From Cyanophora paradoxa CCMP329 (taxonomy: Eukaryota; Plantae; Glaucophyta), in NCBI GenBank assembly GCA_004431415.1, contig QPMI01000395.1:682001-746000 (forward strand): a stretch of 64,000 nucleotides of DNA, in the 5' to 3' direction. Each line of letters begins with the position of its first letter. The stretch's first letter is position 1. Position numbers and translations under genes: made by a program. Shown one piece after another: positions 1,569-40,420 of the stretch. The notes under the pieces were generated by a model that saw only the letters and a program-made list of their open reading frames with translations, was not told where the DNA came from and did no database searches.

Positions 1569-3152
1569 ATGCGTGCAGCAACGACGACGCAGCATGCGCG
1601 GCTGTTGCAGACCTACGCGGTTCGCGCTCCCCCTGCGCCCGCGCACGGTCTCAACATGCGCTGGCGTCCTCCCAGGGCGGGGTTCTCGCCTCCCGGAAAC
1701 GCGCCCTCGCCCTCATCGGGCGCTTCGAGCACCTCAGCATCTTCGCGGACCGGCGCCTCGTCTACATCTTCAGGCAGGGAGGCAACGTAGTGTGCATTCT
1801 TCCGCGGGCTCTCGCCTCCGAGCCGCGAGCGCACGTCTTCTTCCTGGAGCACGTCGACGCCGCCCAGGTTCCTCAGCTGGAGCTTCTGCATCTTCTCAAC
1901 GATGACATCGTCGGCTACGGTCGGCTTCCTGGATCCGACCAGAGTGCCCTCCGGGGAGACGGCCGGCCCCAGCCTGGCAGCCGGGTGGTCGTCGTCAAAG
2001 TTCCTCACGGCTTCCCGACGAACAAGCTCATGTACGTCGTCTTCACCGACGCTGCCGGTTTCGTCGGGGGCTACCTTGCGCGGGCCATGACCAAGATGAA
2101 CGGTTCGCATGCATTCGTTTGGTTCATGTGCACTCTGCCGTAGATCTGACGAGCCGTGACTGATCGCGGCCGCTTGCGCGCGCAGAGGCACATTTCGTCC
2201 CGATTGGGCCGGCAGCGGAGGCGCTCGTCGCGGCCTCCGTCGCAACACCGCTTCCTCCGTTCCTGGTGGCGCTCGTCGACGTTGCCGTGGCGGCGGCGCT
2301 AGCCCCTCTCGCCGGCGAGGACCCGGACAGCATCGACCTTGAGGAGATCCTCAGCTCCCCGATGGTCTGCACGCGCGTCCCTTCTGCCTTCCTCCCTGTC
2401 GCTCCCCTGAGCGCCGGCCCGGCACGCAGGAGCCCTCCGACGCCACCACGACGCCGGTCCGCGCTAAGCCCCCTCGTCGCCTCCTCGCCTCCTCTGCCGT
2501 TGACCCGCCGGGCCCCGCAGGCCTCGGCCACCTCGGCCTCTGACTCGGACTCCGACATCGCGCCGCCCCAGGTTCCTCTCTTGTTGCTCGTTCTGTTTTC
2601 GGCGCAGTTAATCCGTTCTTTTTTTCGGCGCAGGAGGATTCGGTTATGAACGGCGGCTCTGATCTCTCACCGCTCTCCGACGACGAGCTTCTGGTCGGCG
2701 CCAGTACCCCTCTTTCCTGCCCTGATCTGATCCTGTCCACTCCCCTGCAGGACGAGAACTCCCGCCTGGAGGAGGTCATCGGCGTCGGCGAGGTCCCCGT
2801 GCAGGACGATGCGGCGTGGGATTTGTTCAATCACGTCACCGGCCTTCCGGCGCACCTCCTCGGCGACGTCGACGCGAACTGGGCCGCCTCTGCCCTTTGC
2901 AACGTTCGCCTGCCCGCTTCCTTTCCTTTTCCGTCCTTCCCGGGCAACCGAAGGCGCAGGACGCGGAGGAGGGCGCCCCCACCGGCGCCGCGGCCGCCCC
3001 GCCCAGCCTTGGCGAGGACAATGACATGGCGACCCAAGTGTAATCACCTGTCCGGCAACAATTCCTGGCCGCTTTCGGCCTGTGTTGCTTTCCGGTTCGG
3101 TGTAGACATAGGGTCGCTAACGATTTGTCCTGTCCATGAGCTACATGGCTAG
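1569..3152 (+). CDS. Gene (possibly decaying) encoding unknown domain X, copy 1
   Basis: The exon at ~1677-2102 (IFRQGGNVVCILPRALASEP...LLNDDIVGYGRLPGS...PQPGSRVVVVKVPHGFPTNKLMYVVFTDAAG) aligns clearly with ORF 36283-36759(-), including flanking intron positions. An in-frame TGA appears near 2161. Downstream exons and the 3' end are uncertain. Confidence 0.5.
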
Positions 3153-5236: not shown

Positions 5237-8200
5237 TCAGCCGCCGAAGGCCCCGTTGATGCGGAGGCGCTCGAGGGTGAGCTGCGACCCGACGTCCTCG
5301 AGGGCCCCACCCTCCGCAAGGCGCTGGACGGCGCGCGTCTGAGCCAGCGCCGCCCCGTGAGGGAAGCAGGAGGGGCGGGGGCAAAGGAAGAGTAAGAAAC
5401 CGCACCTCGTCGTCAGCGGCGGGGGCGGTCGGCTCGCTGGTCGGCGGCGCCGGGGTGGAGGCGGCCCCGCTGGTGGGGGCGGCGTCGAGGGCAGTGTCGA
5501 GGGTCGCGCGGGCGGCGGCGAGCTCCTCGAGCACGCGGCGGGCCTCCGCCTCGTCCGCCCGCGCCGCCGCGAGGGCCGCCTGCGCCGCCGCCGCCCGCTC
5601 CGCCGCCGACTTGTTGAGGGCGTCGAGCGCGGGGCGCGCCGCCTCCGCCAGCGCCCGCTGCGCCGCCTTGACGACCGCCGGGGACGAGACCGCCGCCGCG
5701 GCCGCCCGCGCGAAGGCGGCGGCCGCCGCGTCGGCGGGGCGGCCGGCCCGAAGCCGGCGGCGGCGAGGGCGGCGCGGTCGACGGAGTAGGCGACGCGCTG
5801 CTTCTCGGCTGCAACAGTTTCGACGACTGGCACCTCCTTGACCTGCGCCGCCCGGGGTCGGAAGCGGTCTCACTGGCGGAGGAAGGGCTGGCTTTGGGGC
5901 CGGGGCTAAGGGCATTGGGTGGGGTGGGTGGGGTGGGTGGGGGGGGGGGGGTGGGGGGGGGGTGGGGGGGGGGTGGGTGGGGGTGGGGGGGGGGGGTGGG
6001 GGACGGGTGGGATCAAGAGCAGCGCCGCGCACCTTCGTCACCGTCCGCTGCTTCACCACCGGCTCCACGCACGGCTCCTGCGGCTGGGGATCAGAAGCGG
6101 CCCGGGCCGGAAGGGGTACAGGGCGGTTCGGGTTCGGCTCGGGGTTCAACTGTTCAGGCGTGGAAAGCGCACCAGCGTGTGCTCGTTGACGTGGCGACGG
6201 CCGACAATTATTCCGAGCAGGCCTGGCACTTCGACTTGTCGAGTTTTTATCTCGTAGAGGCCGCCTTCCGTCGCGTTCCGCCTTCCTGCCACCAGCATAA
6301 CACCCAGCACTGACCACGGCCAGAACGCGTGCTCGTCGTCGTCTCTCCACGTGCGCACGGGCACGTCCTCCATGTACTCCTCTGGCACTGCGAACGCGAG
6401 GGCTCGCCGCGGGCGGAGAAGACACGGCAGGGGCGAGCGCGCACCCTGCTTCTTCACGACACGGGTGCGCGGCTCGTGCTCGACGTACGACTCCTGCACC
6501 TCCACCTCGACCGGCCGGAGCACGGTCTTCTTCTCGGTGACCGTCTCCTTCCACTCGCGCTTCGCCGGCGGTGGGACCGCGCCCCACTGCACCGCCGGGG
6601 ACGCCCCCGCCACCGCCTCCAGCGCCGCGAGGACGGGTCCGGCGCCCAAAGCGGCGAGGGCGGGAGCCGGCACGCCGACAGCGGCGGCGGCGGCGGCGAG
6701 GCGGCCGCGAAGGCGCTCCGCGGACGGTCCGGCGAGCGCCTCCGCCGCCTTCGCGCCGGCCACGCCGGGAACGAGCCGCAGCTCGGCGGCGAGGTACCGC
6801 TCGACCGCCGTGCGCAGCTCTGCCGCCCGCGCCGCCGCCTCCGCCTCCGTTCCCTCCCCACCGCATCCCCCATCCGCCTCCAGAGCAGCGGCGTCGAAGC
6901 GGGCGACGGCCTCAGGCCAGTCGAGTCTATTCCGTGCCGCCGCCCGCGCCGCCGCGTCGCCGCTCGCCAGCGCCGCGCCCGCCGCCAGGACGGCTTGGAC
7001 GCGGTGCGACAGGGCCGCTTCGAAGGGCCCCGCCGCGAGCAGCTCCGGCAGCTCCAGCCCCGCACTCACCGCTGCGCCCCGGCCAGTCAGACGCGCCGGG
7101 GCCGCCGCCAGCGGCGCGGGGGAGGCCGCACCGCGCGAGAAGCTCTCGGCGCACGCGAGCGCTTCCGCAGCAGCGTCCACAGCTCCGGCGCCCTCCTCAG
7201 CGGCAGCCACAGCTCCCGCCAGCTCCGCCTCGGCGCGAACTCCTTGCGGACCTGCGCGGAGTTCGGGTGCGGCTCGGGGTTCAACTGTTCAGGCGTGGAA
7301 AGCGCACCAGCGTGTGCTCGTTGACGTGGCGACGGCCGACAATTATTCCGAGCAGGCCTGGCACTTCGAATTGTCGAGTTTTTATCTCGTAGAGGCCGCC
7401 TTCCGTCGCGTTCCGCCTTCCTGCCACCAGCATAACACCCAGCACTGACCACGGCCAGAACGCGTGCTCGTCGTCGTCTCTCCACGTGCGCACGGGCACG
7501 TCCTCCATGTACTCCTCTGGCACTGCGAACGCGAGGGCTCGCCGCGGGCGGAGAAGACACGGCAGGGGCGAGCGCGCACCCTGCTTCTTCACGACACGGG
7601 TGCGCGGCTCGTGCTCGACGTACGACTCCTGCACCTCCACCTCGACCGGCCGGAGCACGGTCTTCTTCTCGGTGACCGTCTCCTTCCACTCGCGCTTCGC
7701 CGGCGGTGGGACCGCGCCCCACTGCACCGCCGGGGACGCCCCCGCCACCGCCTCCAGCGCCGCGAGGACGGGTCCGGCGCCCAAAGCGGCGAGGGCGGGA
7801 GCCGGCACGCCGACAGCGGCGGCGGCGGCGGCGAGGCGGCCGCGAAGGCGCTCCGCGGACGGTCCGGCGAGCGCCTCCGCCGCCTTCGCGCCGGCCACGC
7901 CGGGAACGAGCCGCAGCTCGGCGGCGAGGTACCGCTCGACCGCCGTGCGCAGCTCTGCCGCCCGCGCCGCCGCCTCCGCCTCCGTTCCCTCCCCACCGCA
8001 TCCCCATCCGCCTCCAGAGCAGCGGCGTCGAAGCGGGCGACGGCCTCAGGCCAGTCGAGTCTATTCCGTGCCGCCGCCCGCGCCGCCGCGTCGCCGCTCG
8101 CCAGCGCCGCGCCCGCCGCCAGGACGGCTTGGACGCGGTGCGACAGGGCCGCTTCGAAGGGCCCCGCCGCGAGCAGCTCCGGCAGCTCCAGCCCCGCACT

Positions 8201-20809: not shown

Positions 20810-23589
20810 TCAAATGAACAGAAGAGAGTCGCCCTGCAGCAGGACGCCCCGCGTTGCCAAGGCGGTTACGAGGAGGGGGCACTCCCCGTCCTCCCAAAAT
20901 AGCCACGTCTCTTCTGACCCCAGAACCTCGTCCTCGAGGAGTCTCCGGGCCGCGAAGTCCGTCCGCGGCCTTAACTGCCGCAGCTGCGCCGCCGCCCGCT
21001 CCGCGAGGGCCTCCAGAGCCTCCGCAAACACCGCCCCGCGCGCCGTGTCGCTCAGGAGGTCGAAGAACCCGCGCCAGAGCCCGTCGGGGTTCGCGGCCGT
21101 CGAGACGGCGCTGATGCTTCGCTGTGCGCGGGAGCCCGCGCTGCTGGCCGATGCGCGGGCGAGGGCGTCGGCGACCCCGCGGACGCCTTGGTCGGCCGAG
21201 ACGATGAGGAAGCGGGTGCGGGCCGGCAGCAGCGCGTGCAGCACCGCGGCCCGCACATGCACATCCGGCTCGAACCCCGTCGCAGCCGGAGAGCGCCGCG
21301 GCACTCGCAGGAGCACCACGTCGGGGCGCTCCTCGCCCCGCGCGAGCCGCTGGAACTGCTCCTGCGAGCGCGTCAGCATCCTAGCGGGGCAGCAGGGCGA
21401 GTCGAGTCGGGGCGGCGAACCTCGTTCGGGGGGTCCTCGTGGTAGAAGACCAGTACCCGGGCGAAGAAGAGGAACGACGGGGCCTCGAGGAGAGATGTGA
21501 TCGCATTCTGGTCGTTCTCGTGGTCGATGAAGACGACGAGCTCGAGCGCTGGCGGAGGGAATCAGTCAGAACCGAGCCAAGCGAAGCGGAGCGGCAGCCG
21601 GCGCACTGTCTTGATTGCGCACACGCAGGTCGCGAAGCGCAGCCTGCAGCATCACTGGCTGCCCCGCTGCCACCGAAGCCGAAGCGAGATCGCCGTCCGA
21701 CAGCGATGGCGACGCGGCACCCTCGCGCTCCTCCCGCCGCAGCCTGCGGGGGGAATGAGTATGGCCGGCCGGCGCGGAAACGGAGAGCGAACGGCCGCAC
21801 GCGTCGCTGTAAGCATCAAAAACTGAGGAGCCCTGGAGCACGACGCCGCGGCGGGCGATCCCTGCCACCAGGAACGGCCAATCTGCGTCCTTCCAGAAGA
21901 GCAGCGCCTCCTCGGGCCGCAGCACATCGTCCCACAGGAAGTTGGAAGCCGCGAACTCCGTCCGCGGCCGGAACTGTCGAAGCTGCGCCGCCGCCCGCTC
22001 CGCGAGGGCCTCCAGCGCCTCCGCCCGCACAGCAGCGCGCGCCGTGTCGCTTAGGAGCTCAAAGGCCGTGCGCCAGAGCCCGTCGGGGTCCGTCGAGGCG
22101 CAGCGGACGTCCCGCTGCGGGCGGAGGCCCGCGCTGCTGGACGAGGCGCGGCCGAGGGCGTCGGCGATCTCGCGGACGCCTTGGTCGGCCGAGACGATGA
22201 GGAAGCGGGTGCTTGCCGGCAGCTGCTCGTGCAGCCTCGCCGCCCGCACGGCCAGCTCGAAGTCCGCCCCGTTTTTGCGCCGGGGCGCCCGCACAGGCAC
22301 GACATCCGGGCGCTCCTCTCCCCGCGCGAGCCGCTGGAACCGCTCCTGTGCGTGTATCGGCAACACAGCGGGGCGGCAGGGCGAGGTGGGGTGGCTGACC
22401 TCGTTCGGGGGGTCCTCGTGGTAGAAGACCAGTGCCCGGGCGAAGTGAAGAAACGAGGGCGCCTCGAGGAGGGCCGCGGAAGCGTCCTGGGCGTTCTCGT
22501 GGTCGATGAAGATGAGGAGCTCGAGCGCTGAGGGGCGGAGTCGGGCGCGGCCGAGATCAACGAAGCGGAGCGGCGGCGGCCGGCGCACCGTCTTTGTTGC
22601 TCACACGGAGATCGCGAAGCGCAGCCGACAGCTGTACTGGCGACTGCACACTCCGTTCCTGCAGCACCACTGGTCAGCGGCCACCGGTGCGGCGGGGCGA
22701 GGTGGGGCGGGGCTGCGAACCTCGTTTGGTGGATCCTGCAGCACCACTGGACGCTCCCCGCTGAATTCCTCGGGCTTCGCTGGCAGGTTCCTTCTCAGCG
22801 CCGGAGACGCGGCGTCCTCCGGCCTCAGCCTGCGCCGAGGCGGTCATCGTTGGCTTTCGGTGAAAGGGAAGGCGGGCGGAGTCGCACGCACGTCTCGCTG
22901 GACGACGGTGGAGGGGACGCGGACTTGACGGGCGTCCATGTGCGCTCCCCGCCAGGAGGCGGGGACGCGGGGCGCCACAGCCTACGTGAGCACAGGAGGC
23001 GAGATGGATTGGGCCCGTCGGACGGCGGGGAAGTGGACACGGGCGACTCAGAGGACCCCTCCTGGGAAGTGCGTGAGGGCGCAGAGACGACACTTCGTGC
23101 GCGTGCACTCACATTGCGGCCCTTCGGAGTCGGCCTTCGGATCGGCGTCCCCGGGGGAGTAGCGCTGAGGTTGGAAGGTGGCGCCGTGGCCCTTGAAGGC
23201 GTCGCCGGGACACTTGAAGGCGTCGTCCACGTCGAAGACGATGCAGTGCTGGTTCTGCTCAAAGGCGATGCACCGACCAGCGAGGGACACCTTGACGAGT
23301 CTCGGTCGTCCTTGTCGTCTATGGCCAGCAGCAGCCCGCCCCTGCGCCCAGGGCAGCCTGTGTTAGCGCCCCAAGAAGGAGGGCGCGGCGGGTGGTGGCA
23401 ATCGTCGCACGTTTCGAAGATTGGAGAAGCCGAAGACGACTCTGGCGCGGGCTCTGCGAGGCGAGCTTCAGCGACGCGGTGCTGCGAGCGACGGCGTAGG
23501 TGAATGCGCACCGATGGTCTGCGCCGACGCCATCTGCGCGTCTTCGGTCGACCGCAACTTTTCAGAAGGATCGGAGCTCCACAGGACAT
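20810..23589 (-). CDS. Protein with an unknown N-terminus and two tandem PIN/NYN-like nuclease modules, each followed by a small helical (wHTH-like) domain
   Basis: Module at ~21820-22530: IFIDHEN...RKNGADFELAVRAARLHEQLPASTRFLIVSADQGVREIADAL...RPRTEFAASNFL...RGVVLQG. This has the PIN/NYN acidic pattern (hhhDxEN, xADF, hhSxDxG). The second module at ~20810-21550 is in frame after one intron. The 5' exons are uncertain. Confidence 0.7.
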
Positions 23590-24602
23590 CGAACTGTCGG
23601 GACAGCTTGCGCGGCTGCGCTCCCCGCACGGAACTCACCCGACTGCCCAGAAGTTTTCGTCGGGAGCACGCACCCTCAAGCTTGTCCCATACATGGTCAG
23701 TTTACTACACAAGTCGCCTTAAGCTTGCGGTCCCCAGGACGCCCCCCGTACGGCTTCGCAAGGTATTTTACTTCGGCCCAGGACGCTTTCAAGGACGTGA
23801 CAATCAGCATGGCTCACCCCGTGTGCTTGGTTTCCGTCGATTTCGACGTCCCTGGGCGTGTGCGCCGTGCCGCGCTTGCGCTTACGCCGACAAGTCGGAC
23901 AAGTCTCCGACAAGACAGGCCTGGGGTACGACAGACAACTGGCGAACAGGTTCATCAGAAGCCTAGGCCTAGGCCTGGCGCCGCGCCGCGGCGGCCGGCG
24001 CCCAGATCTAGAATCGGCCTAGCTTGGCTTGCGCATGCATGCCAGTTGGTTACTAGTACTACTAGGGTAATTAGGCTAACGTTAACGTTGCAATTGGCAT
24101 GCGCGCGCAGGCGCAGCGCCGCCAACTTACAAGTTGGCCATTTTGCAAGCTTTAAGCCTTGAAGGTGCAAGGTGCTCGGCCCGGCGGAGCTCGAGGCGCG
24201 CGGAGCATGATCATGATCTAGATCCGCGAAACAGAACGGACTGCTTACTCGAACTTGAATCATTTGAATAGAATAGAATAGAATCACAACCTACGGGGCC
24301 CGGGGGGATCGCGGCCGCTCGCCCCACCGTAGTCTCTCTAAAAAGGGAACTTCGGAAAATACGTCTTGAAAAATCTGCAGCTGTATGATATCGATAGGGT
24401 CATAACTTAGTGACTCAAAATCGAAAACAGAAGAGAATATCGCGCATTTAATTTGATGATCAGGATCCGGCTCCGATCAGCGCTTCCGAGCACTGGCCTA
24501 GATCAGAGCACTCAATACCGAAAAGATAAGCTCCGAAAAAGATCAGGGCTGCCGAGCACCGTGGCACTGGCCTGGATTAAAGCACGGGCCGAGCGCGTCG
24601 CT

Positions 24603-29732: not shown

Positions 29733-30660
29733 GCGCGTATCCGGCCGCCTCGGCGGCCTCGCCCGGGCGCTCGCTCCGCCGGCCTTGCCGGGCCGCTCGC
29801 GGCGCTCGCCGCGCATCGGCGCCCCCGCGCCCGCGCGCCCTAGGCCTCGCTGCCGCCGTCTCGAGCTCTAGATCTAGATCTGATATCGATCATGAGCTCG
29901 CAGCGGCCGGGGCGGCGTACCGCGCGGCGGCGCGGCGTACCGCGCGGCGGGGGCGAAGGCGGCGGGGCGGCTGTTTCCGGTGGCGGCGCCGGGCGGCGGC
30001 CGCGGCATCGTGGAGCGGGTCTGGGAGGAGGCGCGGGCGGTGGAGGACGTGCGAGTGGTCCCGCGCGAGTTCGAGACGACGGAGACCGTCCTCGAGGCGG
30101 AGCTCGAGGAGCGCACCCGCACCGTCGAGAAGCTCGGTGCGCCCCGGCCCGCCGGCTGAACGCGGGCGCCGGCGCGCTGTGCTGACGCGTGGCGCGCAGA
30201 GCCCTTCGCGGCGACAAAGATGGTCACCCGCACGCGATACGTTCCCGGCCAAGAAGACAGAGCCCGTCCCGGCCCGTCCCGGCCCTCTCACGGGGTTACG
30301 GCAGGTGCGGGAGGAGCCGGAGCGCTACGAGCGGGTCGTGCACGACCGCAAGGCGGCCTACAGCGCCGACCGCGCCGGCCTCGCGCGCGCCGGCGCCGCC
30401 GAGGCCCTCGCGGCCTCCGCCCGCTCCGCCGCCGTCCGCGCCCTCGAGGAGGCCGCCGCCGCCGGGCCGCGCCCGCTGTCACAGTGTCGTCCGCGCGGCG
30501 CACGCGGCGGCGGCGGCGGCGGCGGCGCCGGGGCTGGCCGGGGGCCCTCGCGGCGGCGCGGGCGCGGGTGGCCGGGCCATGGAGGCGGATCCGGACCGTC
30601 GGACGTCGACGGGGCGGCGGGCAGCGCGGGACGCGGACGTGGCTCCTCCGGCGCGTCCCC
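29733..30660 (+). pseudogene. Truncated, degenerate type-B dynamin-like fragment (3' half only, tip exon deleted)
   Basis: Aligns with B1 ~12070-13240 (VERVWEEARAVEDVRVVPREFETTET, VREEPERYERVVHDRKAAYS). No GTPase exons, the tip is missing, and there are many small insertions. Confidence 0.85.
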
Positions 30661-31090: not shown

Positions 31091-34000
31091 CTAGTTCGAG
31101 GGCAAGCTGTCGAGGGCCGCTCGGGCGGCTGCGAGCTCCTCGAGCACGCGGCGGGCCTCCGCCTCGTCCGCCCGCGCCGCAGCGAGAACCGCCTGCGCCG
31201 CCGCCGCCCGCTCCGCCGTCGCCTTGCTGAGGGCCTCGAGCGCGGGGCGCGCGGCCTCCGCCAGCGCCCGCTGCGCCGCCTTCACGACCGCCGGGGACGA
31301 GACAGCCGCGGCGGCCGCCCGCACGACGGCGGCGGCCGCCTCGTCGGCGGGGCGGTCGGCGCCGAAGCCAGAGCTGACGAGGGCGGGGCGGTCGACGGAG
31401 TAGGCGACGCGCTGCTTCTCGACGGGCACATTCTCGAGAGTGGGAACCATCTCGACCTGCCGCGATTCTCGGGGTTGGCGGGTGCAGCGAGCCCAACAGC
31501 TTCACATTGTGCCACACCTTCGGCACCATCCGCTGCTTCTGCACGGGCTCCACGTACGACTCCTGCGGCCGGGGGATCGAAATCGGGGGGGGGGGGGGGG
31601 GGGGGGGGCATGCGAGACGGGGTACGGGGCGCACGGAGCATGCCTCCTTGACAGGAAGCACGCGCACCTCCTTCCGAATTTCCGTCTGCGTGCAGGCCGG
31701 CGTCAGGCGGGGCTCTCTGTTACGCGGTGGAGGGCGGCACCTCGGTGTAGGGCACGTGGACCGTGTACTTGTCGATCTGAATGCCGAGGAACCGCCTTTT
31801 ACGCGTCTCGGGCTTCACTCTCTGGACTTGGACCGGCGCGTCCACCTCGTGCAACTTCGTCACTGCGCGGGGCTCGCGGCGGGCGGCGAGCGATCGCGTC
31901 GTGGGCGCAACGCGCACCTTCCTTCTCCACGGTGCGGGTGCGCACCTCGTGCTCGATGTACGATTCCACCTCCTCCACAATGGTCGGGCGGAGCACCTCC
32001 CTGTGCTCGACCTTCACGTCCGTCCACTGCCGCTTGGCGGGCTCCGGGGCCTCGCCCCACTGCAGTGGCGGCAGCTCCCCCGCCGCCGCCTCCAGCGCCT
32101 CGAGGACGGGACCGGCGTCCAGAGCGGCAAGGGCGGGGGCCGGCTCGCCGACCGTGGCGGCGGCGGCGGCGAGGCGGCGGTGAAGGCCCTCAGCGGCGGG
32201 CCCGGCGAGCGCCTCCGCCACCTTGGAGCCCGCCACGTCGGGGACGAGTCGCCCCAGTTCATCTGTGAAGTAACGCTCGACCGCCGCCCACAGCTCCACC
32301 GCACGCGCCGCCGCCTCTGCCTCCGTCCCTTCGCCGCAGCAGGCTTCATCCGCTTCGAGAACTGCGTCTTCGAAGCGGGCGATGGCCCCGGGCCAGTCGA
32401 GTCTCTTGCGTGCCGCCGCCCGCGCCGCCGCGCTGCCGCTCACCAGCGCCGCAGTGGCGGCGAGAACGACGGCCGCGCGATGTGACAGGGCTGCTTCGAA
32501 GGGCCCCGCCTCGAGCAGCTCCGGTAGCTCCAGACCCGCGATCACCTCTGCGCCCCCGCAGGTCAGACGATCAGCCACCACCGCTGCCGCCGCCGCAGGA
32601 AGGCCGCACCGCGCGAGAGGCCGTCGACGCTAGCCAGGGCCGCCGTCGCCTCTTTAGCTGTCGTCGCGCCCTCCTCGACTGCCTTGGTCGCCCCCGTCAG
32701 CTCCGCCTCGGCAAGCTGCGCTCCGCTCAGCGAGCGGCGCGCCTCGCGAGGGGAGCGGCGGCGTGCCTTGGAGATGGCCGCGAGACCGGCGCGGATCTCG
32801 CCAGCGGCGGAGGCCGCGAGCTGCCGCCTCGTGTCGACGTAGAGGGCGCGCAGCCGCTCCTCCACCGCCGCCAGTCCGCTCTGCGCCGTCTGAGCGACAG
32901 CGGCAGAGAGCGGAGGATGACAGGGGCTCGCACTTCTTTAAGAACAGCCACCGCCTCGGCCTGCAGGGTCTCGACGGTCTGAGTTTTCCAACTCCGGCCG
33001 AAGGCCTCCCTGAACAGCTCGGCCTTCTCGGCGTCCGTGGCGCGGCCGAGCAGGTGGAGCCGTGCTCGAAGCGCTGCAAGAGCGCTGAACGGCAGGACGC
33101 ACGTTGGCGGTATCATCACCTGCGCAAACATCAGAGACGAACGCGCTTCGGGTAGAAACCGCGCATGCGCACCCCGGCCTTGCCAAGCTCCGCGCTCACC
33201 CACGCCGGCGCGTCGGCGGGCTTCACGCTGCGCTGTTCGTCGGGGTTATATGCATCCACCTGCGGCGCTCTGCAGTCAGCGAGGTGCGGCGGGCTGGGAG
33301 GCGAGACACGGCGGACCTTGTTGAGGAGGACCAGAACGCGGGGCGAGTCTCCGGGGCGGGTCTCGAAGAGGTGCGGGCGCTGCTGCTTCAGCTGCGCGAG
33401 CGCCGCCGTCCCCTCCGCCTCGTTCATCTTCGTGTACTCCATCACGACGATCACGTAGTTCGCGATGCGGAGGATGCGGTCCGACGCGGCGCTCAGGTGC
33501 TCGGCCCCGAACTCGCCCTTGCCCGCCGCGTCAAAGAACGAGAAGCGCGTCTCGCTCGACGGCAGGTCCGTGAGTAGCTCCAGCGGGGCCTCGACCGTCA
33601 AGCGCCCTGCGCGCCGAATCGGAAGATCGCTCGAGGGCGGAGTGCAGGGCGCTGACCGTCGAAGAGGGCGAGCGTGTCGTGATTGGCGCGGGCCTCGTCG
33701 TTGATCGCCTCGAGGCGCGCGCGAATACTCTCTGCCCCCTCCACCAGCTCCCCGAGCTGATCACCCGCTCCCGCGATGCGCAGCAACGGTGTCGTGCGGC
33801 CGGGAGTATGAACAACCTCAACGGGCACCGCCGTCTCTGGCTGCGTGGCGCTGCGAGGGGGAATAAGATATTATACGTTGTGTTCGATCGAAAAGAACGC
33901 GCGCACGCGGGCTGCAGGCGTTGACCGAGGAAGGCGTTGAGGGTCGTGGACTTGCCGGCCTTGAAACGACCCATGACGCCCACAACGAATTGCGACTCGT

Positions 34001-35150
34001 CTAGGGACCGCTTGGTCTTATCGAGCACCCGGATGAATTCGTTGGCTGCATCCGCGAGGGCCGAGGCTAGCTGGTCGGCGTCGGGCGTGCGCCGACGGGT
34101 CTCACGGCCGGCTGCCTGCGCTGCGGACGTGGCTGCTTTGATGGTGACTCCGGCCGCCTGGCTGACGTGCCCGATCGCAGAAGTCGCTTGAATAGAAGTG
34201 GGCGCCGACGAGCGCAACCGAAGGCTGGAGTCTTCATGAGCTGGGCTGGGGCTGACACTTGATTTCGATTTCGAGTCGACGTATGCAACGGAGGCTCCTT
34301 GAAGCACGACGCCACGGCCGGCGATGGAGGTCCTGAGCGTCTGCCACTCGGAATCCGCACCAAAGAGCAGCTGCTCCTCGGGCCGCAGCACAGCGTCCCA
34401 GAGGAACTTTCGAGCCGCAAACTCCGTCCGCGGTCGGAACTGCCGCAGCTGCACCGCCGCCCGATCCGCGAGCGCATCCAGCGCCTCCGCGCGCACCGCG
34501 CCGCGCGCCGTTTCGCTCAGAAGCTCGAAGGCCGTGCGCCAGAGACCGTCGGGGTCCGTCGAGGCGCAATGGACCTTCCGCTGCAGTCGGGAGCTCGCGC
34601 TGCTGAGCGAGGCGCGGCAGAGAGCGTCGGCGATCTCGCGGACGCCTTGGTCGGCCGAGACGATGAGGAAGCAGATGCTGGCGGGAAGCAACGCGTGAAG
34701 CGACGCCGCCCGCACTGCCAGCTCGAAGTCCGCCGCGTTTCGGAAGCGTTTCGGGGCCCGCAAGGGTACCACGTCGGGGCGCTCCTCGCCCCGCGCGAGC
34801 CGCTGGAAGCGCTCCTGCACGAGGGTCAGTGGCGATCGATGTGGCTGGGCGAGGCCTAGGTGGGGCGGGGCTGCGGACCTCGTTTGGTGGATCCTCGTGG
34901 TAGAAGACGAGTATCCGGGCGTAAAACAAGAGCGAGGGGGCCTTGAGGAGGGCCGCAATCGCCCGCTGGTCGTTCTCGTGGTCGATGAAGATGACGAGCT
35001 CGAGCTTGAGTACTGGATGGACGGAGTAAGACGCGGCTGAGCCCAAGGGAGCACTACAGCGGCGGGCGCACCGTCCTCCTTGCCGACCCGTAGGTCCCCA
35101 AGCGCAGCCTGCAGGTTCACTGGCTCCGCCGAGGACAGAGCGAGATCCCG
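31091..35150 (-). CDS. PIN/NYN-like nuclease fused in frame to a type-A dynamin-like GTPase (A3)
   Basis: ORF 33531-35315 runs without a stop from the PIN module (RNAADFELAVRAASLHALLPASICFLIVSADQG) through a Ser-rich linker into FVVGVMGRFKAGKST. No Met lies between the PIN module and the A-type N-terminal helix. Then FFDAAG, LLNK|VD, tip ETRKRRFLGIQIDKY, and stop at 31091. Confidence 0.75.
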
Positions 35151-37320
35151 TGCGGGCGACGGCGACGCAGGGCCCTTTGTCGGCAACCTGCAAGAATGAC
35201 CTTTCGCATCGCTTGAGCGGAGACGGAAGGTGGGACGGGGCTTACACGTCGTGTTCGGGTGGGGAAGATGATGCGGGCTTCGCCAGCGACGCGGAGGGCG
35301 CTTCCTGCAAAACACGTGAGCACATAAAAGTCATGAGGGTCCACTTCAGCTCACTTCTTGGGGCTTCGGAGCAGGCCTGCGGATCATCGAAAGAAGGAAG
35401 TCAGATAAATGAGCGATTCGGGACGAAAAGCTTCAAGTTGCGCACTTTTCTGCCTGTCCAGCTCTCAGAGGAACGACAGACCGCTTTTCTCTTTCGTAGA
35501 AGGACAGAGTCAGCGAACCAAAGTTCACATCGGGCAGCTTTCTGGATTTTGAGAAGTAAGCGATGGCCACAACATGAGGTGCGGCGTGAAGCGCGGACCC
35601 CTCGGCCGGTCTGGCGACCACCAGATCGACGGCGATGGGCACGGTCAGGCTGCCGGCGAAGGCGAGTGGGAGAACCCGCTTCTGATCCTTCAACCAGCTC
35701 TCCAGCGCTTCCTTGCCGCAGAGAGGACACAGGTCAAGGCCCGGCCGGAGAGACTTGTGCCCCCCGCCCTGCGGCGTCCGCTCGTACTGCGGCACCCGCT
35801 GCGTCACCAGCGCCAGCTCCAGCCTGCTCGAGCGCTCGAGTGTTTCCAGCTCGCTGCGCGGTAGTCAGATTGTCTGCGGCCGCCGGAAGTTATCCGAGCG
35901 ACTCACCCCAACGTAGCGACGCGGTTGAGGCGGAAAACACTGTACTTCCAATCGGGGAGCCGGAATCTGCCGTCCGCTTCGCGCACGACGGGAACAGCAC
36001 TCGGCCCCACATCCGTGTCCTCCCGCCGCAGCACCTCCAGCACTTCGAGAGGCTTCTGCATCTCATCTGATGCCTCTTGCGGGTGCGCCGCAGTGGCCGT
36101 GAGCTCTGCGCGCCGAGCATTAGCTACGTGAGGCTGAAATTAATCCACCCTGCCCACCAGCAGGCTCTGCACCGCGGAATGACTCCGCGGGCTTTACACT
36201 TGTCATATCGAAGGAGGCCTGAGGAAGCGGGAGAAGGTGCTGGACAGCTTGCAGTGCCTCTGGGATCTCCAGTAGTGCGTAGTCACGGTCTGTGAAACCG
36301 GCGCAGATCAGAAAAGAAATAAACGAGCACTGAAGACCGCGACGCGTGCGGACCCGTAGGCGCAGTCACCACCACGACGTTGAAGCTGCCAACCTCGCCA
36401 TCGCTGTCGGTGAAGACAGCGCGTGCGAGCTTGTTGATCGGGAAGGAGAAGGGCGCGTGAAGGACGGCAACGCGTTGCCCGGGTTGGGGCGGCTGATCCA
36501 GGAGGACGCTGCTGGCGCTGCCGGGAAATAATCCGTATCGGATGATGTTGTCGTCTTTCAGGCTCCTGAGCTGCAGCTCCGCGATGTTCGCAGTGCCGTC
36601 GACGTCTACACGAAGCGCAGGCGACGACGCGAAAGGTCTGGGCAGCACCAACGCCACGTTGGCGTGGCGCTTGATCACCGCAGCCTCCAGGCCTCTCTCG
36701 ATACGCCGGCTAACGGAAAAAGCGCAGGATCCGGGGCCCCGCGGGTTCTTCGAGGCCACGGCAAGACCCTTCGGTACCCGGTCCGCCGTGCGTCAGCGCT
36801 ATGAAGCTCATGGTGAGCGCCGTCGCGCTGTGAGCACCTGAAGCCTCGAAAGGACCTGCAGCAGCGCGCCAGCCGATCGTCGCTCCATCACTGGCACACG
36901 CTCCTCAAGATCGGGCTCCTCCCGGTTCTGCCGCAGCTCCGCCATAAGAATTGCACAAGGGGGAGAAGTTATGCCACCGCTTACCGCCATTCTCAGCAAG
37001 CGCTTCAGAGTCGTTTCCTGCCACGAGAAAGGTCAGGAGCTTGGAGGAGGGGGCCGCGGCGCGGAGCTGGGAGAAGAGCGGGCACGCACGTCAGGGGAGA
37101 GCGGAGAGCAATCCTCCAGCCCACCTGGCGGGTTCCAAGACTCGCGTACGACCCCGGTACGGCTTGCGCCTGCAGCTCGCGCTTCTGGAATCTTCGCTCC
37201 AGGGCTCTGCGCATCGCTGCAGCATGAGCGCTCGTGCGCAAGTAGCACGTGTGCATGCGGGCGCTCACATTTCTGCTCGCCGGCATCACGTCAGCCGAGG
37301 CTTGAACTCGCCCGCAGTGT
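35151..37320 (-). CDS. Exons encoding unknown domain X (copy 2) and further unknown sequence, probably the upstream part of the PIN-A3 gene
   Basis: ORF 36283-36759 is homologous to the 1677-2102 exon. Protein-like exons DRDYALLEIPEAL.., ELTATAAH..RLPDWKYSVFRLNRVATLG and ELETLERSS..DLCPLCGKE..VNFGSLTLSFYE join with consistent intron phases. Confidence 0.55.
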
Positions 37321-40300
37321 AGGATGCCGGAGGCGGCGGAGCGGCCGGCGGCGCCCTCGAGGGCGGCGGCGGCCGCGGCGAGCTCCGCGCGGGCCGCCTC
37401 CAGAGCCGCCGCGTCCCGCGCCGCCGCCCCGCTCGCCGCCCCGTCCGCCTCCGCCCGCGCCCGCGCCGCCGCCGCGAGGGCCTCCAGCCCGGTGCCGCCG
37501 CCGCCGCCGCCGCCGCATGCGCCGCGCGGACGACGGCGGGCGCGGCGGCGGCCTCCTCGAGGGCGCGGAGGGCGGCGGAGCGGGCGGAGGCCGCGAGGGC
37601 CTCGGCGGCGCGCGCGAGGCCGGCGCGGTCGACACTGTAGGCCGCCTTGCGGTCGTGCACGACCCGCTCGTAGCGCTCCGGCTCCTCCCGAACCTGCGGT
37701 ATCCCCATGAGAGGGGTACGCGCGCTGGGGTCCTGAGGAGGGGTGCGGGGCCGCACCTTTTTCACGGTCTTCTCCTTCGGCACGCGCTCGACGTACTTCT
37801 CCTGGGAGAGGTTCAGAAGGCGCATGGGGGGAGGAGATGGAAGGGGGTACGCTCGCCTCCTTCTGGACGGGCTGGTACTCGACGGACTCGACCTCCTCCT
37901 GGGACTCCTCCACGTGGAACTCGTATCCCTGCTCTCCGTCGAGAAGGAAAGCTTTTTCAATCTGGAGGCCGACGATCGCCGATTCCGCCCCGCCAGCGCG
38001 CACGTCGCGCCCAGCCGCGCCTCCATCTCCGCGGCCAGGCACCTGCTGCATGCGGGGAACCATCTTCTTCGCAGCAAAGGGCTCTGCGCGCCACGCGTCA
38101 GCGCCGCGCGCCCGCGAGCAGCCGGCGGGGCGCACCGATCTTCTCGACGATGCGGGTGCGCTCCACCGCCTCGAGGACGGTCTCCGTCGTCTCGTACTCG
38201 CGCGGCACCATCCGCACGTCCTCCACCGCCCGCGCCTCCTCCCACGCCCACTCCACGATGTCGCCGCCCGGCGCCGCCGCCGGCAGCAGCCGCCCCGCCG
38301 CCTCCGCCCCCGCCCGCGCCGCCGCGCGGTACGCCGCCCGGCCGCCGTGAGCTCCGCGGGGCGGCGGCGAGCGCGGGCGCGGGGGCGCCGACGCGCCCGG
38401 CGAGCGCCGCGAGCGGCCCGACGAGGGTGGCGGAGCGAGCGGCGAGGCGCGCCTCGAGGCCGGCGGCCACGCGGCCCGCCGCCGCCTCCAGCTCGGCGGC
38501 CAGGTACGCGCGCCCCGCCGCCCAGAGCGCCTCCCGCCGCCGCTCCGCCGCCTCGCGCGTCTCCGCCTCGCCCCCGCAGAGCCCGTCCGCCTCGGCAGCC
38601 GCCGCGTCGAGGCGGGCGACCAGAGCGGGTCGCCGAGGGCCCGCCGCGCCGCCGCCCGCTCCGCCTCCGAGCCCGAGAGCAGCGCCAGCGCGGCCGCCGC
38701 CGCCGCCTCGAGCCGGGCCAGCGCCGGGCCCTCCTCCCGCCAGAGCGCGGCCAAGAGCGGAGCTGCCTCGAGGTCCAGCACCCGCGCGCCGCTTTTCGCA
38801 GCTGCGCGCGGCGGTTAGCGAAGGTGCCGCGCTTGGCCAGAGGCTGCTTTGCTCACCGTCCTCCGCGCCGGCTGCCTCCCGAAGGATCTCCTCCGATGCC
38901 GCAAAACGGCGGTCGGCTTCGCCCTTGGCGCTCTCGAGCGCCGCAGCGGCCTGCCCGGCCGCCTGCGCACGCAAAGCATCAGGCGCTGCCGGCGTGGAGG
39001 CGGCAGTGGGCGCGGGCGGCGCACGGTCTGGAGGGCGGCGAGTCGGTCGCGGAGCTCCTCGGTCGCCGCGGCCGCCAGCTGCGGCCCGTGCTGCTCGTAC
39101 AGCGCCCGCACCCGCCCCTCCGCCGCCGGCATCCCGCTCTGCGCCGCGTCAGAGTCGGCCGGCGCCGCCGGGCGGATCGGAGCACCCGCTCGAGGACGGC
39201 CCGTGCCTGGGCCAGCAGCGCCTCGTCTGTCTGTCCTCGCCAATCCTCACCGAAGGCGTCCTTAAATAGCTCGGCCTTCTCCTCGTCGCTGGCCGCGCCC
39301 TGCAGGTAGAGCCGGGCGCGGAGGCCGTCCAGCCCCCGCACGGCGATCACGCTCCCCGCCGCCAGCTCCACCTGCCGCGAGCCCGTCGGCGGACAGATCT
39401 GACAGCCCCCGAACAAGGAGCGCACCCCGGCCTCCCGCAGCCGGGCGCGGTACCACTCCGGCGCGGCCTCGGGCGTCACGCTCCGCTCGTCCGCCTTGTG
39501 CTCGTCCGCCTGCGCGGAAACCGAGCTGTCAGCGCCGCTGTCTGCAGCGCTAAAACGCAGCACGGACCTTGTTCAGGAGGACGAGGACGGCGCCGCGGCG
39601 GAAGAGGCACGGGCGCTTGCGGAGGAGCTCCTGCAGGATGGCGATGTCCTCCGCCTCGTTCATCTTCGTGTAGTCCGCCACGTGGATCACGAAGTTCGCC
39701 CGCTCCAGCGCCCACTCCGACGCCCGCGCCAGGACATGGGCGCCGCTCTCGCCGATGCCGGCCGCGTCGATGAGCGCGAGGCGGCCGCCGTGGTCGGGCA
39801 GGCCCCGCATCGCCTCCAGCGGGACCTCCACCGTCACGCGCTTCTCCGCGTACGCGGCGCGCGCGTTCCCGCCGCGGGCGGCCGCGTTCGCCGAGCGGAG
39901 CAGCTGCTGGACCTGTTCGAGGGTGACGGAGGATGGTGCCCCGTCCAGCGCCAGCAGACGTAGCATTTCAGCGTGCACGAACGCCACGGGGAACGCCGTC
40001 TGCGGCTCAACGGACCTGCCAGGGCGAGATCAGGTCCGTCGAAAGCTGGTGAACGAAACGAGGGCTCACGACGGCTGCAGGCGGCGCCCGACGAAGTAGT
40101 TGATGATCGTGCTCTTTCCCGTCTTGATGCGGCCCACGAAGACGACCTTGAACAACGCTTCCTCTGGCAGGCAAGCGCAAGGTCAGCGGCATCGCGTGGC
40201 AAACTGCGAGTAAAAGAAGCGGACCAAGAGTCTTCAGGAGGTCGCTCAACACTTCCTCCGTGTGCTTCGCGCGGGTCCCGAGCGCAGCATAGCTCTCGCC

Positions 40301-40420
40301 GAGCTGGGAGGCGCCTTCGCATTGAACCGCGAACGTGCGCGACATCGCCGCTTGCTGCAGCAGCGCTGAAGCCGCCTGCAGCTTCGTTGCGGGAGGGATG
40401 AGGGTGCTGTAAGCGGTCAT
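37321..40420 (-). CDS. Bacterial-dynamin-like GTPase, type B, copy B3 (several 1-bp frameshifts; no stop at the position where B1 and B2 stop)
   Basis: MTAYSTLIPPATKL.., VGRIKTGKST, LIDAAG, LLNK|AD. Tip GRGDGGAAGRDVRAGGAESAIVGLQIEKAFLLDG. Frameshifts lie in G/C runs at about 38630, 38350 and 37490. Confidence 0.7.

What the first reader, a model, noticed from the sequence alone, without database searches (positions are those of the whole stretch)
33900..35010. PIN/NYN nuclease domain fused in frame to a dynamin-like GTPase
Seen: an uninterrupted frame runs from the PIN module into the A-type N-terminal helix and P-loop, and A3 has no separate start or promoter motif. The PIN module keeps the three acidic motifs (FIDHEN, NAADF, VSADQG). 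From memory it resembles PIN7 / ZNF451-C-terminal PIN-like domains followed by an RPRT..RGVV helical tail. Known: PIN domains are RNases used as toxins and immune effectors. Inference: a sensor/scaffold GTPase coupled to an RNase effector, which supports the defence hypothesis.
Basis: partly seen in the sequence, partly recalled or inferred. Interest (0 to 1): 0.88.

Follow-up and report, generated by a model that had tools for sequence, protein, structure and literature searches.

The report
Nuclease-like domain fused to algal dynamin
In the alga Cyanophora paradoxa, a transcribed and spliced gene joins a small nuclease-like (NYN/PIN-type) domain directly to a bacterial-type dynamin GTPase, a combination I found in no other protein or paper searched; whether the domain cuts RNA, and for what purpose, is untested.

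Summary
The window is Cyanophora paradoxa nuclear DNA and the gene is on the minus strand.

- **Layout:** one 908-base exon (34814-33907) carries the NAADF and VSADQG motifs, a conserved helical tail, a Ser-rich linker of about 35 residues, and the A-type N-terminal helix with the GKST P-loop. FIDHEN is in a separate exon (35012-34879), joined in frame by a 64-base GT-AG intron.
- **Transcription:** spliced contigs from runs of three studies, labelled only as probable RNA, cover both junctions. An unspliced run lacks the joints.
- **No separate start:** A3 has lost the ATG that A1, A2 and A4 use.
- **Selection:** both halves are under purifying selection (dN/dS 0.2-0.3).
- **Domain identity:** Pfam places the domain in PIN_11, the NYN group. 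The match passes threshold in the 74%-identical neighbour gene and falls just below it in A3. The fold model is weak but compatible.
- **Extent:** the RNA runs upstream through an unknown "domain X" and probably into the dynamin gene B3. That fits the public 2424-residue model tig00020510_g9940.
- **Distribution:** the module occurs in three Cyanophora genes only.

RNase activity and a defence role remain inference. The scan also noted this same stretch in an overlapping window (s1-543460), on the same DNA.

The parts
35073..35186 (-). Leader exon of the PIN cassette (ends ...QAALGDLRVGKED). The same leader precedes both PIN modules of the neighbouring PIN-PIN gene.
   Evidence: Exon map of public model P0001. 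RNA joint 35012/35072 seen in three runs; its block length of 114 implies the next intron is also spliced. Paralog matches at 21790-21608 and 22643-22590.
34879..35012 (-). PIN exon 1: strands beta1 and beta2 of the NYN-like core, with FIDHEN (34989-34972) and YHEDPPNE.
   Evidence: Translation. Run X8 contig 23 joins this exon to the upstream exon and carries 15 bases of exon 2 as a loose end. Motifs are conserved in all four modules.
34815..34878 (-). Intron 1, 64 bases, GT..AG. It shifts the frame so that FIDHEN and NAADF become one reading frame.
   Evidence: Splice sites. P0001 reads ...DPPNE|ERFQ.... The X8 loose end at 34878 equals the start of exon 2.
34644..34814 (-). PIN C-terminal half in exon 2: NAADF (34739-34725) and VSADQG (34661-34644).
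   Evidence: Pfam PIN_11 PF18479, residues 30-72 of exon 2 against profile positions 68-110 of 118, E 1.7e-5, 25.4 bits against a 26.6 cut-off. The paralog scores 39.5 bits.
34281..34643 (-). Conserved helical tail of the module (RPRT...RGVVLQG).
   Evidence: Conserved in A3, both modules of P0002, and P0004. Predicted helical with pLDDT 70-84 in the P0002 model.
34179..34280 (-). Ser-rich linker of about 35 residues with no paralog match. Probably former non-coding sequence between a PIN cassette and A3.
   Evidence: No tblastn match for exon 2 residues 197-212. Upstream of the A-type start the alignment to A1/A2/A4 breaks down.
33907..34178 (-). A-type N-terminal helix and G1 P-loop (GRFKAGKST, 33971-33945), at the end of exon 2.
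   Evidence: 73-80% identity to A1, A2 and A4. Pfam Dynamin_N start. The A1/A2/A4 ATG is not conserved in A3.
33851..33906 (-). Intron 2, 56 bases, GT..AG.
   Evidence: Joint 33850/33907 in runs X1 and X5, absent from the unspliced run X13.
33657..33850 (-). Exon 3 of the GTPase domain (G2 region).
   Evidence: RNA contig 1/15. 80-81% identity to A1/A2/A4, dN/dS 0.19-0.33.
33607..33656 (-). Intron 3, 50 bases, GT..AG.
   Evidence: Joint 33605/33656 in X1 and X5.
31091..33606 (-). Rest of A3: the G3 motif DAAG, the G4 motif NK|VD restored by splicing, then stalk, arm and stop codon.
   Evidence: Exon map. Joints 33257/33315 and 33116/33170. Pfam Dynamin_N and NCBIfam CrfC/DynA hits.
35245..37206 (-). 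Upstream exons on the same RNA contig: Pro/Ser-rich spacer, a 22-base micro-exon (35354-35375), and domain X (about 35598-36768), which has no family match.
   Evidence: X5 contig 16 (1733 bases) with joints 35012/35072, 35303/35354 and 35375/35445, and blocks reaching 36767. No Pfam hit. X has a paralog at 1766-2074 on the plus strand.
37269..40420 (-). B3, a B-type dynamin-like GTPase. It has lost the stop codon that ends B1 and B2 and is probably spliced onto domain X.
   Evidence: C-terminal ends compared. P0001 model. The length of X1 contig 3 (346+352) and the bin depths fit the spliced model exons up to 37380; this is inferred, because those pieces were not displayed.

Best explanation
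This is a real, expressed chimeric gene of Cyanophora paradoxa.

Shown:
- A lineage-specific cassette was placed in front of the bacterial-type dynamin-like GTPase A3. The cassette has a leader, a NYN-type PIN-like core and a helical tail.
- A3 has lost its own ATG and its shared head-to-head promoter region.
- PIN and GTPase can therefore only be made as one polypeptide, joined by a Ser-rich linker.
- The mRNA continues upstream through an unknown domain X.

Probable: the mRNA also includes the B-type GTPase B3. That would give a two-headed dynamin with X and the nuclease-like domain between the heads.

Inferred mechanism: the dynamin part binds a membrane and assembles under GTP control. This concentrates or orients the NYN domain, which then cleaves RNA near that membrane. 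The layout is an NTPase switch plus nuclease effector, as in biological-conflict systems, so defence against viruses or other invaders is the most likely role.
For: Organism and model:
- EukProt EP00741 Cyanophora paradoxa, tig00020510_g9940.
- GC content and short introns match Price et al. 2019 (PMC6704402).

Fusion:
- Single exon 34814-33907.
- Its two ends match different paralog families in the same frame.
- The ancestral ATG is lost, and exon 2 has one Met only, one residue before the first P-loop glycine.

RNA:
- Minus-strand GT-AG joints appear in runs from three studies and are absent from the unspliced run.
- Contig 33458-34653 crosses the tail, linker and P-loop.
- A 1733-base contig crosses PIN exon 1 into domain X.

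Constraint:
- dN/dS is 0.30 for PIN and 0.19-0.33 for the GTPase, at dS 0.4-0.6.

PIN identity:
- PIN_11 E 1.7e-5 for A3 and 7.2e-10 for the paralog.
- The Asp of FIDHEN, NAADF and SADQG fall at the end of beta1, the start of a helix and just after beta3 in the model, which are the usual PIN active-site positions.
- The MARF1 NYN domain is among the best fold matches (Z 7.3).

GTPase:
- G1, G3 and G4 motifs are present (G2 region not checked motif by motif). Dynamin_N, CrfC/DynA and LeoBC hits.

Context:
- NTPase-nuclease fusions and dynamins are recurrent in immunity (bioRxiv 10.64898/2026.10.19.760177 and 10.1101/2022.05.11.491447; PMC8844932).
Against: - No biochemical or expression-response data exist.
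- The second Asp of the NYN S-x-D-x-D motif is missing (SADQG).
- A3's own PIN_11 score (22-25 bits) is just under Pfam's cut-off, and only the C-terminal half of the profile aligns.
- The fold model is low-confidence (mean pLDDT 43), and the NYN match is tied with many generic alpha/beta folds.
- PDB sequence searches were blank.
- Matelska et al. (2017) list no tested nuclease activity for the family and record ZNF451's PIN-like domain as binding p300 (PMC5499597).
- All runs laid are contigs, labelled only as probable RNA. Contigs cannot show transcript starts, so a minor internal start is not excluded.
- The link to B3 rests on length and depth arithmetic.
- The fusion was found in one species only, so its conservation cannot be judged.
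Confidence: 0.5

Rival explanations
1. The PIN-like domain is catalytically inert. It serves as an adaptor that binds protein or RNA, or drives oligomerisation, and recruits partners to the dynamin assembly, without cleavage.
For: One of the four canonical NYN acidic positions is missing. The second module of the neighbouring PIN-PIN gene has also lost the NAADF Asp and is still kept in frame. ZNF451's PIN_11 domain is reported to bind p300, and Matelska et al. list the family's function as unknown (PMC5499597).
Against: The three remaining Asp and the Glu of HEN are invariant in A3, module 1 of P0002 and P0004. Matelska et al. count 3-4 active-site residues as the norm for PIN_11 and call it a potential active nuclease.
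Confidence: 0.25
2. The fusion has a housekeeping role. The protein would couple local RNA processing or decay to membrane remodelling, for example at the cyanelle envelope or the endomembranes, and would not act in defence.
For: Bacterial dynamin-like proteins act in membrane repair and fusion (PMC8844932). Cyanophora lacks DRP5B, and its outer-envelope division mechanism is unknown (PMC6704402). NYN proteins such as LabA or YacP are linked to RNA metabolism.
Against: The module is confined to one species among 1.84 billion representative proteins and two contig collections. The locus is a multi-copy, mosaic and partly decayed family, which is unusual for core housekeeping genes.
Confidence: 0.17
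3. The fusion is a non-functional by-product: a read-through or chimeric transcript of tandem genes in a decaying duplicate. The public model would then be over-merged by the gene predictor.
For: Price et al. warn that Cyanophora gene models need curation and that genes lie end to end. A pseudogene fragment lies nearby at 29971-30370. The B3 link is only inferred.
Against: The PIN-A3 junction lies inside a single exon, so no prediction step is involved. The frame stays open, dN/dS is 0.2-0.3 at dS about 0.45, all RNA-supported introns keep the frame, and A3 has no alternative start.
Confidence: 0.08

Closest known systems
PIN_11 (PF18479), the C-terminal PIN-like domain of metazoan ZNF451; NYN group of the PIN-like superfamily
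   Same: Best Pfam match. Minimal NYN-type core with Asp at the end of beta1, at a helix start and after beta3. No helical insert.
   Different: Described as restricted to Eumetazoa and fused to zinc fingers. Here it is in a glaucophyte, with its own helical tail, no conserved Cys/His loop, only the C-terminal half of the profile aligned, and a dynamin-like GTPase attached.
NYN RNases such as MARF1 (PDB 5yaa) and YacP/Rae1 (PDB 5mq8)
   Same: D-x-E-N motif on beta1 and an alpha/beta sandwich. Both appear among the fold matches (Z 7.3 and 6.5).
   Different: No significant sequence match. The second Asp of S-x-D-x-D is absent. No recognised OST-HTH/LOTUS or RRM partner domains.
Two-headed bacterial dynamin DynA of Bacillus subtilis, and paired BDLPs (LeoA/LeoBC 'Eleos', CrfC)
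   Same: Bacterial-type dynamin GTPases working as A/B pairs. If the 2424-residue model is right, two heads sit in one chain as in DynA. DynA and the Leo-like pair protect against phages.
   Different: Eukaryotic nuclear genes with many spliceosomal introns. Only weak profile hits (LeoBC 34 bits, DynA 33 bits). Neither DynA nor the Leo-like pair is described with a nuclease domain in the papers read here.
NTPase-plus-effector fusions of conflict systems (for example ParA-PIN, STAND or GIMAP with nuclease effectors) and NYN_YacP-TetM GTPase fusions
   Same: The same logic: an NTP-driven switch or scaffold covalently tied to a PIN-type RNase.
   Different: The NTPase here is a membrane-remodelling dynamin-like protein. 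The nuclease sits N-terminal to it, or between two heads. I found no description of a PIN/NYN-dynamin fusion.

Membership tests
PIN_11 / NYN group of PIN-like domains | Match to Pfam PF18479 at or above the gathering score (26.6 bits) | tested here: inconclusive
   A3 exon 2 scores 25.4 bits and P0001 scores 22.1 bits, both just below. The 74%-identical paralog P0002 scores 39.5 bits (E 7.2e-10), above. P0004 scores 24.8 bits. Only profile positions about 61-111 of 118 align.
PIN_11 / NYN group of PIN-like domains | Four conserved acidic active-site residues | tested here: inconclusive
   The Asp of FIDHEN, NAADF and SADQG and the Glu of HEN are present in A3. The second Asp of S-x-D-x-D is absent (SADQG). 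Matelska et al. list 3-4 residues for PIN_11.
PIN_11 / NYN group of PIN-like domains | PIN-like alpha/beta/alpha fold with a parallel sheet | tested here: inconclusive
   The AlphaFold2 model of P0002 has mean pLDDT 43 (core 55-68). Its strand-helix order fits the fold. MARF1 NYN gives Z 7.3 at rank 9 but is tied with generic Rossmann-like folds.
PIN_11 / NYN group of PIN-like domains | Eumetazoan ZNF451 context: C2H2 zinc fingers and a conserved Cys/His loop | tested here: not met
   The protein is from a glaucophyte, has no zinc-finger hits, and its Cys/His positions are not conserved between modules. It is a NYN-group relative, not a ZNF451 orthologue.
Dynamin superfamily (bacterial dynamin-like type) | G1 P-loop, G3 DxxG and G4 NKxD motifs, and a Dynamin_N match | tested here: met
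   GRFKAGKST, DAAG, and NK|VD after the RNA-supported splice. Dynamin_N scores 77.5 bits in P0001 (two stretches) and 35.9 bits in A-type P0003. CrfC E 8.9e-24.
Dynamin superfamily (bacterial dynamin-like type) | Helical stalk with a membrane-binding paddle; GTP-dependent assembly | not tested
   I did not model the stalk and arm. An earlier scan note (s1-573989) describes them. Assembly needs biochemistry.
Eleos (LeoA/LeoBC) anti-phage system | Operon of LeoA plus LeoBC dynamin-like genes in a prokaryotic defence island | tested here: not met
   Only a weak LeoBC hit (E 4.5e-9 on B3, 2.6e-4 on A1), no LeoA model hit, and a eukaryotic intron-rich locus.
DynA-type two-headed dynamin | Two dynamin GTPase modules in one polypeptide | tested here: inconclusive
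   Public model P0001 has both heads. B3 lost the stop codon of B1/B2. RNA contig lengths and bin depths fit splicing from B3's last exon into X, but those pieces were not displayed.

The most novel reading that the evidence does not exclude
B3-X-PIN-A3 would be one protein of about 2400 residues: a two-headed dynamin with an RNase embedded between the heads. It would act as a cell-autonomous immune effector of a eukaryote. GTP-driven assembly on a viral or damaged membrane would switch on local RNA cleavage, so one chain combines Mx/DynA-like membrane sensing with RNase-L-like killing.
Probability: 0.15. Interest if true: 0.85.

Novelty: new variant of a known kind. Interest (0 to 1): 0.6.

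Why it matters
Dynamin-family GTPases defend animals (Mx) and bacteria (DynA, the Leo-like pair), but how they stop invaders is unclear, and those discussed in the papers read here carry no enzymatic effector. A natural, expressed fusion of a dynamin-like GTPase to a nuclease-type domain offers a testable model: the GTPase would be the membrane-bound switch and the nuclease the effector. It would also extend the PIN_11/NYN lineage, so far described only from animals, to a glaucophyte. The locus is also a clean example of gene fusion by loss of a start codon and capture of a duplicated cassette.

Tried and rejected
Searches that found nothing:
- Sequence searches of the PIN module against PDB chains, with a single protein and with a three-row profile. 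The only hit was a chance match to PipY at E 0.075.
- Word-based homologue searches with P0002 (two regions) and with A-type P0005. They returned only Cyanophora paralogs.
- Scans of viral and metagenome contigs with the module alignment. No relatives.
- Exact look-up of P0004's locus. Not on record.
- ESM Atlas. The machine was busy on five tries.
- Pfam on PIN exon 1 alone and on the domain X exons. No hits. An earlier call (5) used the wrong frame for exon 1.

Structure:
- Foldseek on the low-confidence model gave only long, meaningless alignments (TM about 0.13).
- I left the second structure job unused. No whole PIN module can be referenced without joining exons, and the alignment could not be made deeper.

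Ideas rejected:
- That P0004's N-terminus is a degenerate dynamin-like GTPase, which would make a second GTPase-PIN pairing. hhalign probability was 0.05%.
- That the helical tail is an OST-HTH/LOTUS domain. There was no Pfam hit and the model is all-helical.

Method note:
- I sent no self-joined exon sequence to any search tool.
- Spliced proteins were searched only as the public models P0001 and P0002, which the tools returned.
- Exons were joined only inside a local script, for the dN/dS calculation.
Full report
**What the DNA is.** The window has 69.5% GC, and the gene is broken by many 50-70-base GT-AG introns. The exhaustive protein search returned a public model whose residues 1393-1694 are the stretch in question. 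That model, P0001, is EukProt EP00741 Cyanophora paradoxa tig00020510_g9940.t1, 2424 residues. Price et al. 2019 report 67.6% GC, a mean of 9.2 short introns per gene, densely packed end-to-end genes, and a warning that models need curation (PMC6704402). Earlier scan notes had already named Cyanophora; I confirmed it independently.

**Anatomy on the minus strand.**
- PIN exon 1 (35012-34879) encodes the first two strands, with FIDHEN and YHEDPPNE.
- A 64-base intron (34878-34815) follows.
- Exon 2 (34814-33907, 302 codons) encodes, in one frame:
  - NAADF and VSADQG;
  - a conserved helical tail (RPRT...RGVVLQG);
  - a Ser-rich linker of about 35 residues;
  - the A-type N-terminal helix and the P-loop GRFKAGKST.
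- Introns of 56 and 50 bases follow.
- The G4 motif NKVD is only formed by a further splice.

**Is it more than chance?** Long open frames are common here: 59 stop-free runs of at least 300 codons, covering 20% of all codon positions. Frame continuity alone proves little. The decisive results are these:
- **Two homologies in one frame.** Exon 2 residues 1-196 match the two modules of the neighbouring PIN-PIN gene (74% and 64%). Residues 213-302 match A1, A2 and A4 (73-80%) in the same frame.
- **No own start.** A1, A2 and A4 start with an ATG just before this homology. A3 has non-ATG sequence there, and upstream of it A3 is unrelated to the shared A/B head-to-head intergenic region.
- **No usable Met.** The only Met in exon 2 is one residue before the first glycine of the P-loop.
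- **Purifying selection.** dN/dS is 0.30 between A3's PIN module and module 1 (dS 0.44), and 0.19-0.33 for GTPase exon 3 against A1/A2/A4 (dS 0.39-0.60). Both halves have been constrained since an old duplication.

**RNA evidence.** All four runs laid are Logan contigs, and their library type is not on record. X1, X5 and X8 come from three studies and are labelled "RNA?"; I treat them as RNA because their contigs are spliced. X13 has no type on record; I treat it as DNA because it holds about 98% of the stretch and its contigs show none of the joints.
- X1, X5 and X8 carry joints with CT..AC ends, which are GT..AG on the minus strand.
- The joints lie at 33116/33170, 33257/33315, 33605/33656, 33850/33907, 35012/35072, 35303/35354 and 35375/35445. 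Each matches an intron of P0001.
- One 1090-base contig, found in both X1 and X5, runs 33458-33605 / 33656-33850 / 33907-34653. It carries the GTPase exons, P-loop, linker, tail and part of VSADQG on one molecule.
- X8 contig 23 joins 15 bases of exon 2 to PIN exon 1 and the upstream exon. That confirms intron 1.
- X5 contig 16 (1733 bases) carries the three upstream joints and blocks up to 36767, so PIN exon 1 is linked to domain X.
- Contigs break at 34643-34653 and near 34780-34797 in X13 as well. These stretches are nearly identical among the PIN paralogs, so the breaks are assembly artefacts. The 126 bases between them lie within exon 2 and have depth in both X1 and X5.
- Contigs cannot show transcript ends, so a minor internal start is not excluded. 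No break was seen between PIN and GTPase.

**How far the gene extends.**
- B1 and B2 end with a stop soon after ...EAARAELAA.... B3 has lost that stop.
- X1 contig 3 is 698 bases. Of these, 346 lie on 36422-36767. The remaining 352 equal exactly the model exons 36838-36927, 36985-37017, 37090-37206 and 37269-37380. The position 37380 is a reported loose-end point.
- Bin depths at 36801-37000 (3.68 in X1, 5.69 in X5) match the spliced prediction (3.64 and 5.6), not an unspliced one.
- This suggests that B3's last exon is spliced onto X, as in the 2424-residue model. It is inferred, because those pieces were not displayed. A start inside B3's last exon, with translation from the Met of ...LRMANREE..., remains possible.

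**What the module is.**
- Pfam gives PIN_11 (PF18479): E 1.7e-5 on exon 2, 1.8e-4 on P0001, 2.7e-5 on P0004, and 7.2e-10 (39.5 bits, above the 26.6 cut-off) on P0002. PIN7 is a weak second hit.
- Matelska et al. 2017 define PIN_11 as the ZNF451 C-terminal domain. They describe it as a minimised NYN variant found only in Eumetazoa, related to bacterial PIN_7, with 3-4 active-site residues and no tested function (PMC5499597).
- Only the C-terminal half of the profile aligns here.
- The AlphaFold2 model of P0002 is poor (mean pLDDT 43; core 55-68; tail 70-84). Its strand-helix order places the three Asp at the end of beta1, at a helix start and just after beta3. From general knowledge of PIN folds, these are the canonical active-site positions.
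- An exhaustive structural search gave the MARF1 NYN domain at Z 7.3 (rank 9) and Rae1/YacP at Z 6.5. Both are tied with many generic alpha/beta folds.
- The fold is therefore compatible with PIN/NYN but not proven.
- The second Asp of the usual S-x-D-x-D is absent.

**Distribution and origin.**
- Among 1.84 billion representative proteins, only three carry the module, and all are from Cyanophora:
  - this gene;
  - the tandem PIN-PIN gene g9937, at window 20813-23600 on the minus strand;
  - tig00021036_g17298, which is PIN plus a right-handed beta-helix.
- Viral and metagenome contig scans found none.
- The cassette unit (leader QAAL.DLRV..D, core, tail) is the same in all local copies, with the intron at the same place.
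- The simplest history is duplication of a cassette in front of A3, followed by loss of A3's start and conversion of the spacer into a coding linker.

**Function.**
- The GTPase part keeps its G1, G3 and G4 motifs and matches Dynamin_N, CrfC, DynA and, weakly, LeoBC.
- Bacterial dynamin-like proteins remodel membranes. DynA and a Leo-like pair protect bacteria from phages (PMC8844932; bioRxiv 10.1101/2022.05.11.491447).
- NTPase-PIN fusions are a recurrent theme in conflict systems (bioRxiv 10.64898/2026.10.19.760177).
- I found no paper describing a PIN/NYN-dynamin fusion.
- My best reading is a membrane-assembling GTPase scaffold that positions a NYN nuclease, most likely in a conflict or defence role.
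- The fusion itself I hold at about 0.9. The nuclease-effector mechanism I hold at about 0.4-0.5.
- Rivals are an inert adaptor domain, a housekeeping role in membrane-linked RNA metabolism, and a non-functional read-through product.

**Verdict.** This is a new variant of a known kind (NTPase plus nuclease effector; paired or two-headed bacterial-type dynamin). It is confined so far to one species, and the biochemistry is untested.

Noticed in passing
window 20813-23600 (-): Stand-alone gene (P0002, tig00020510_g9937) with two complete PIN cassettes in tandem, plus a remnant of a third (...VLQDPPNEE...) upstream. The second module has lost the NAADF Asp (AATGF) but stays in frame.
   Followed up: partly
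window 37005-37450 (-): B3 has lost the stop codon that ends B1 (about 13290) and B2 (about 20515). It reads on into new sequence, and RNA contig arithmetic suggests it is spliced to domain X.
   Followed up: partly
window 35598-36768 (-) and 1766-2074 (+): Domain X, about 330 residues between B3 and the PIN cassette, has no Pfam, NCBIfam or PADLOC match. It has a 43%-identical paralog at the start of the window.
   Followed up: partly
window 35354-35375 (-): A 22-base micro-exon flanked by 50- and 69-base introns, supported by spliced contigs in three runs.
   Followed up: yes
window 31091-31100 (-) versus 5240-5353 (-) and 44224-44325 (+): A3 ends at ...DSLPSN and lacks the C-terminal tail of about 35-60 residues (...QRLAEGGALEDV...RINGAFDG) that A1 and A4 carry.
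   Followed up: partly
P0003 (tig00020510_g9933, A-type): The public model contains a near-exact internal duplication of over 300 residues (stalk plus arm). It could be a real tandem duplication or an assembly or model artefact.
   Followed up: no
P0004 (tig00021036_g17298, another contig): The third PIN-module protein combines the module with a C-terminal right-handed beta-helix (Beta_helix/NosD, E 6e-21) and a long unassigned N-terminal region. No dynamin similarity was detected.
   Followed up: partly
window 29971-30370 (+): A fragment resembling the B-type C-terminal region (56-60% identity) sits just downstream of A3. It looks like a decayed B copy.
   Followed up: no
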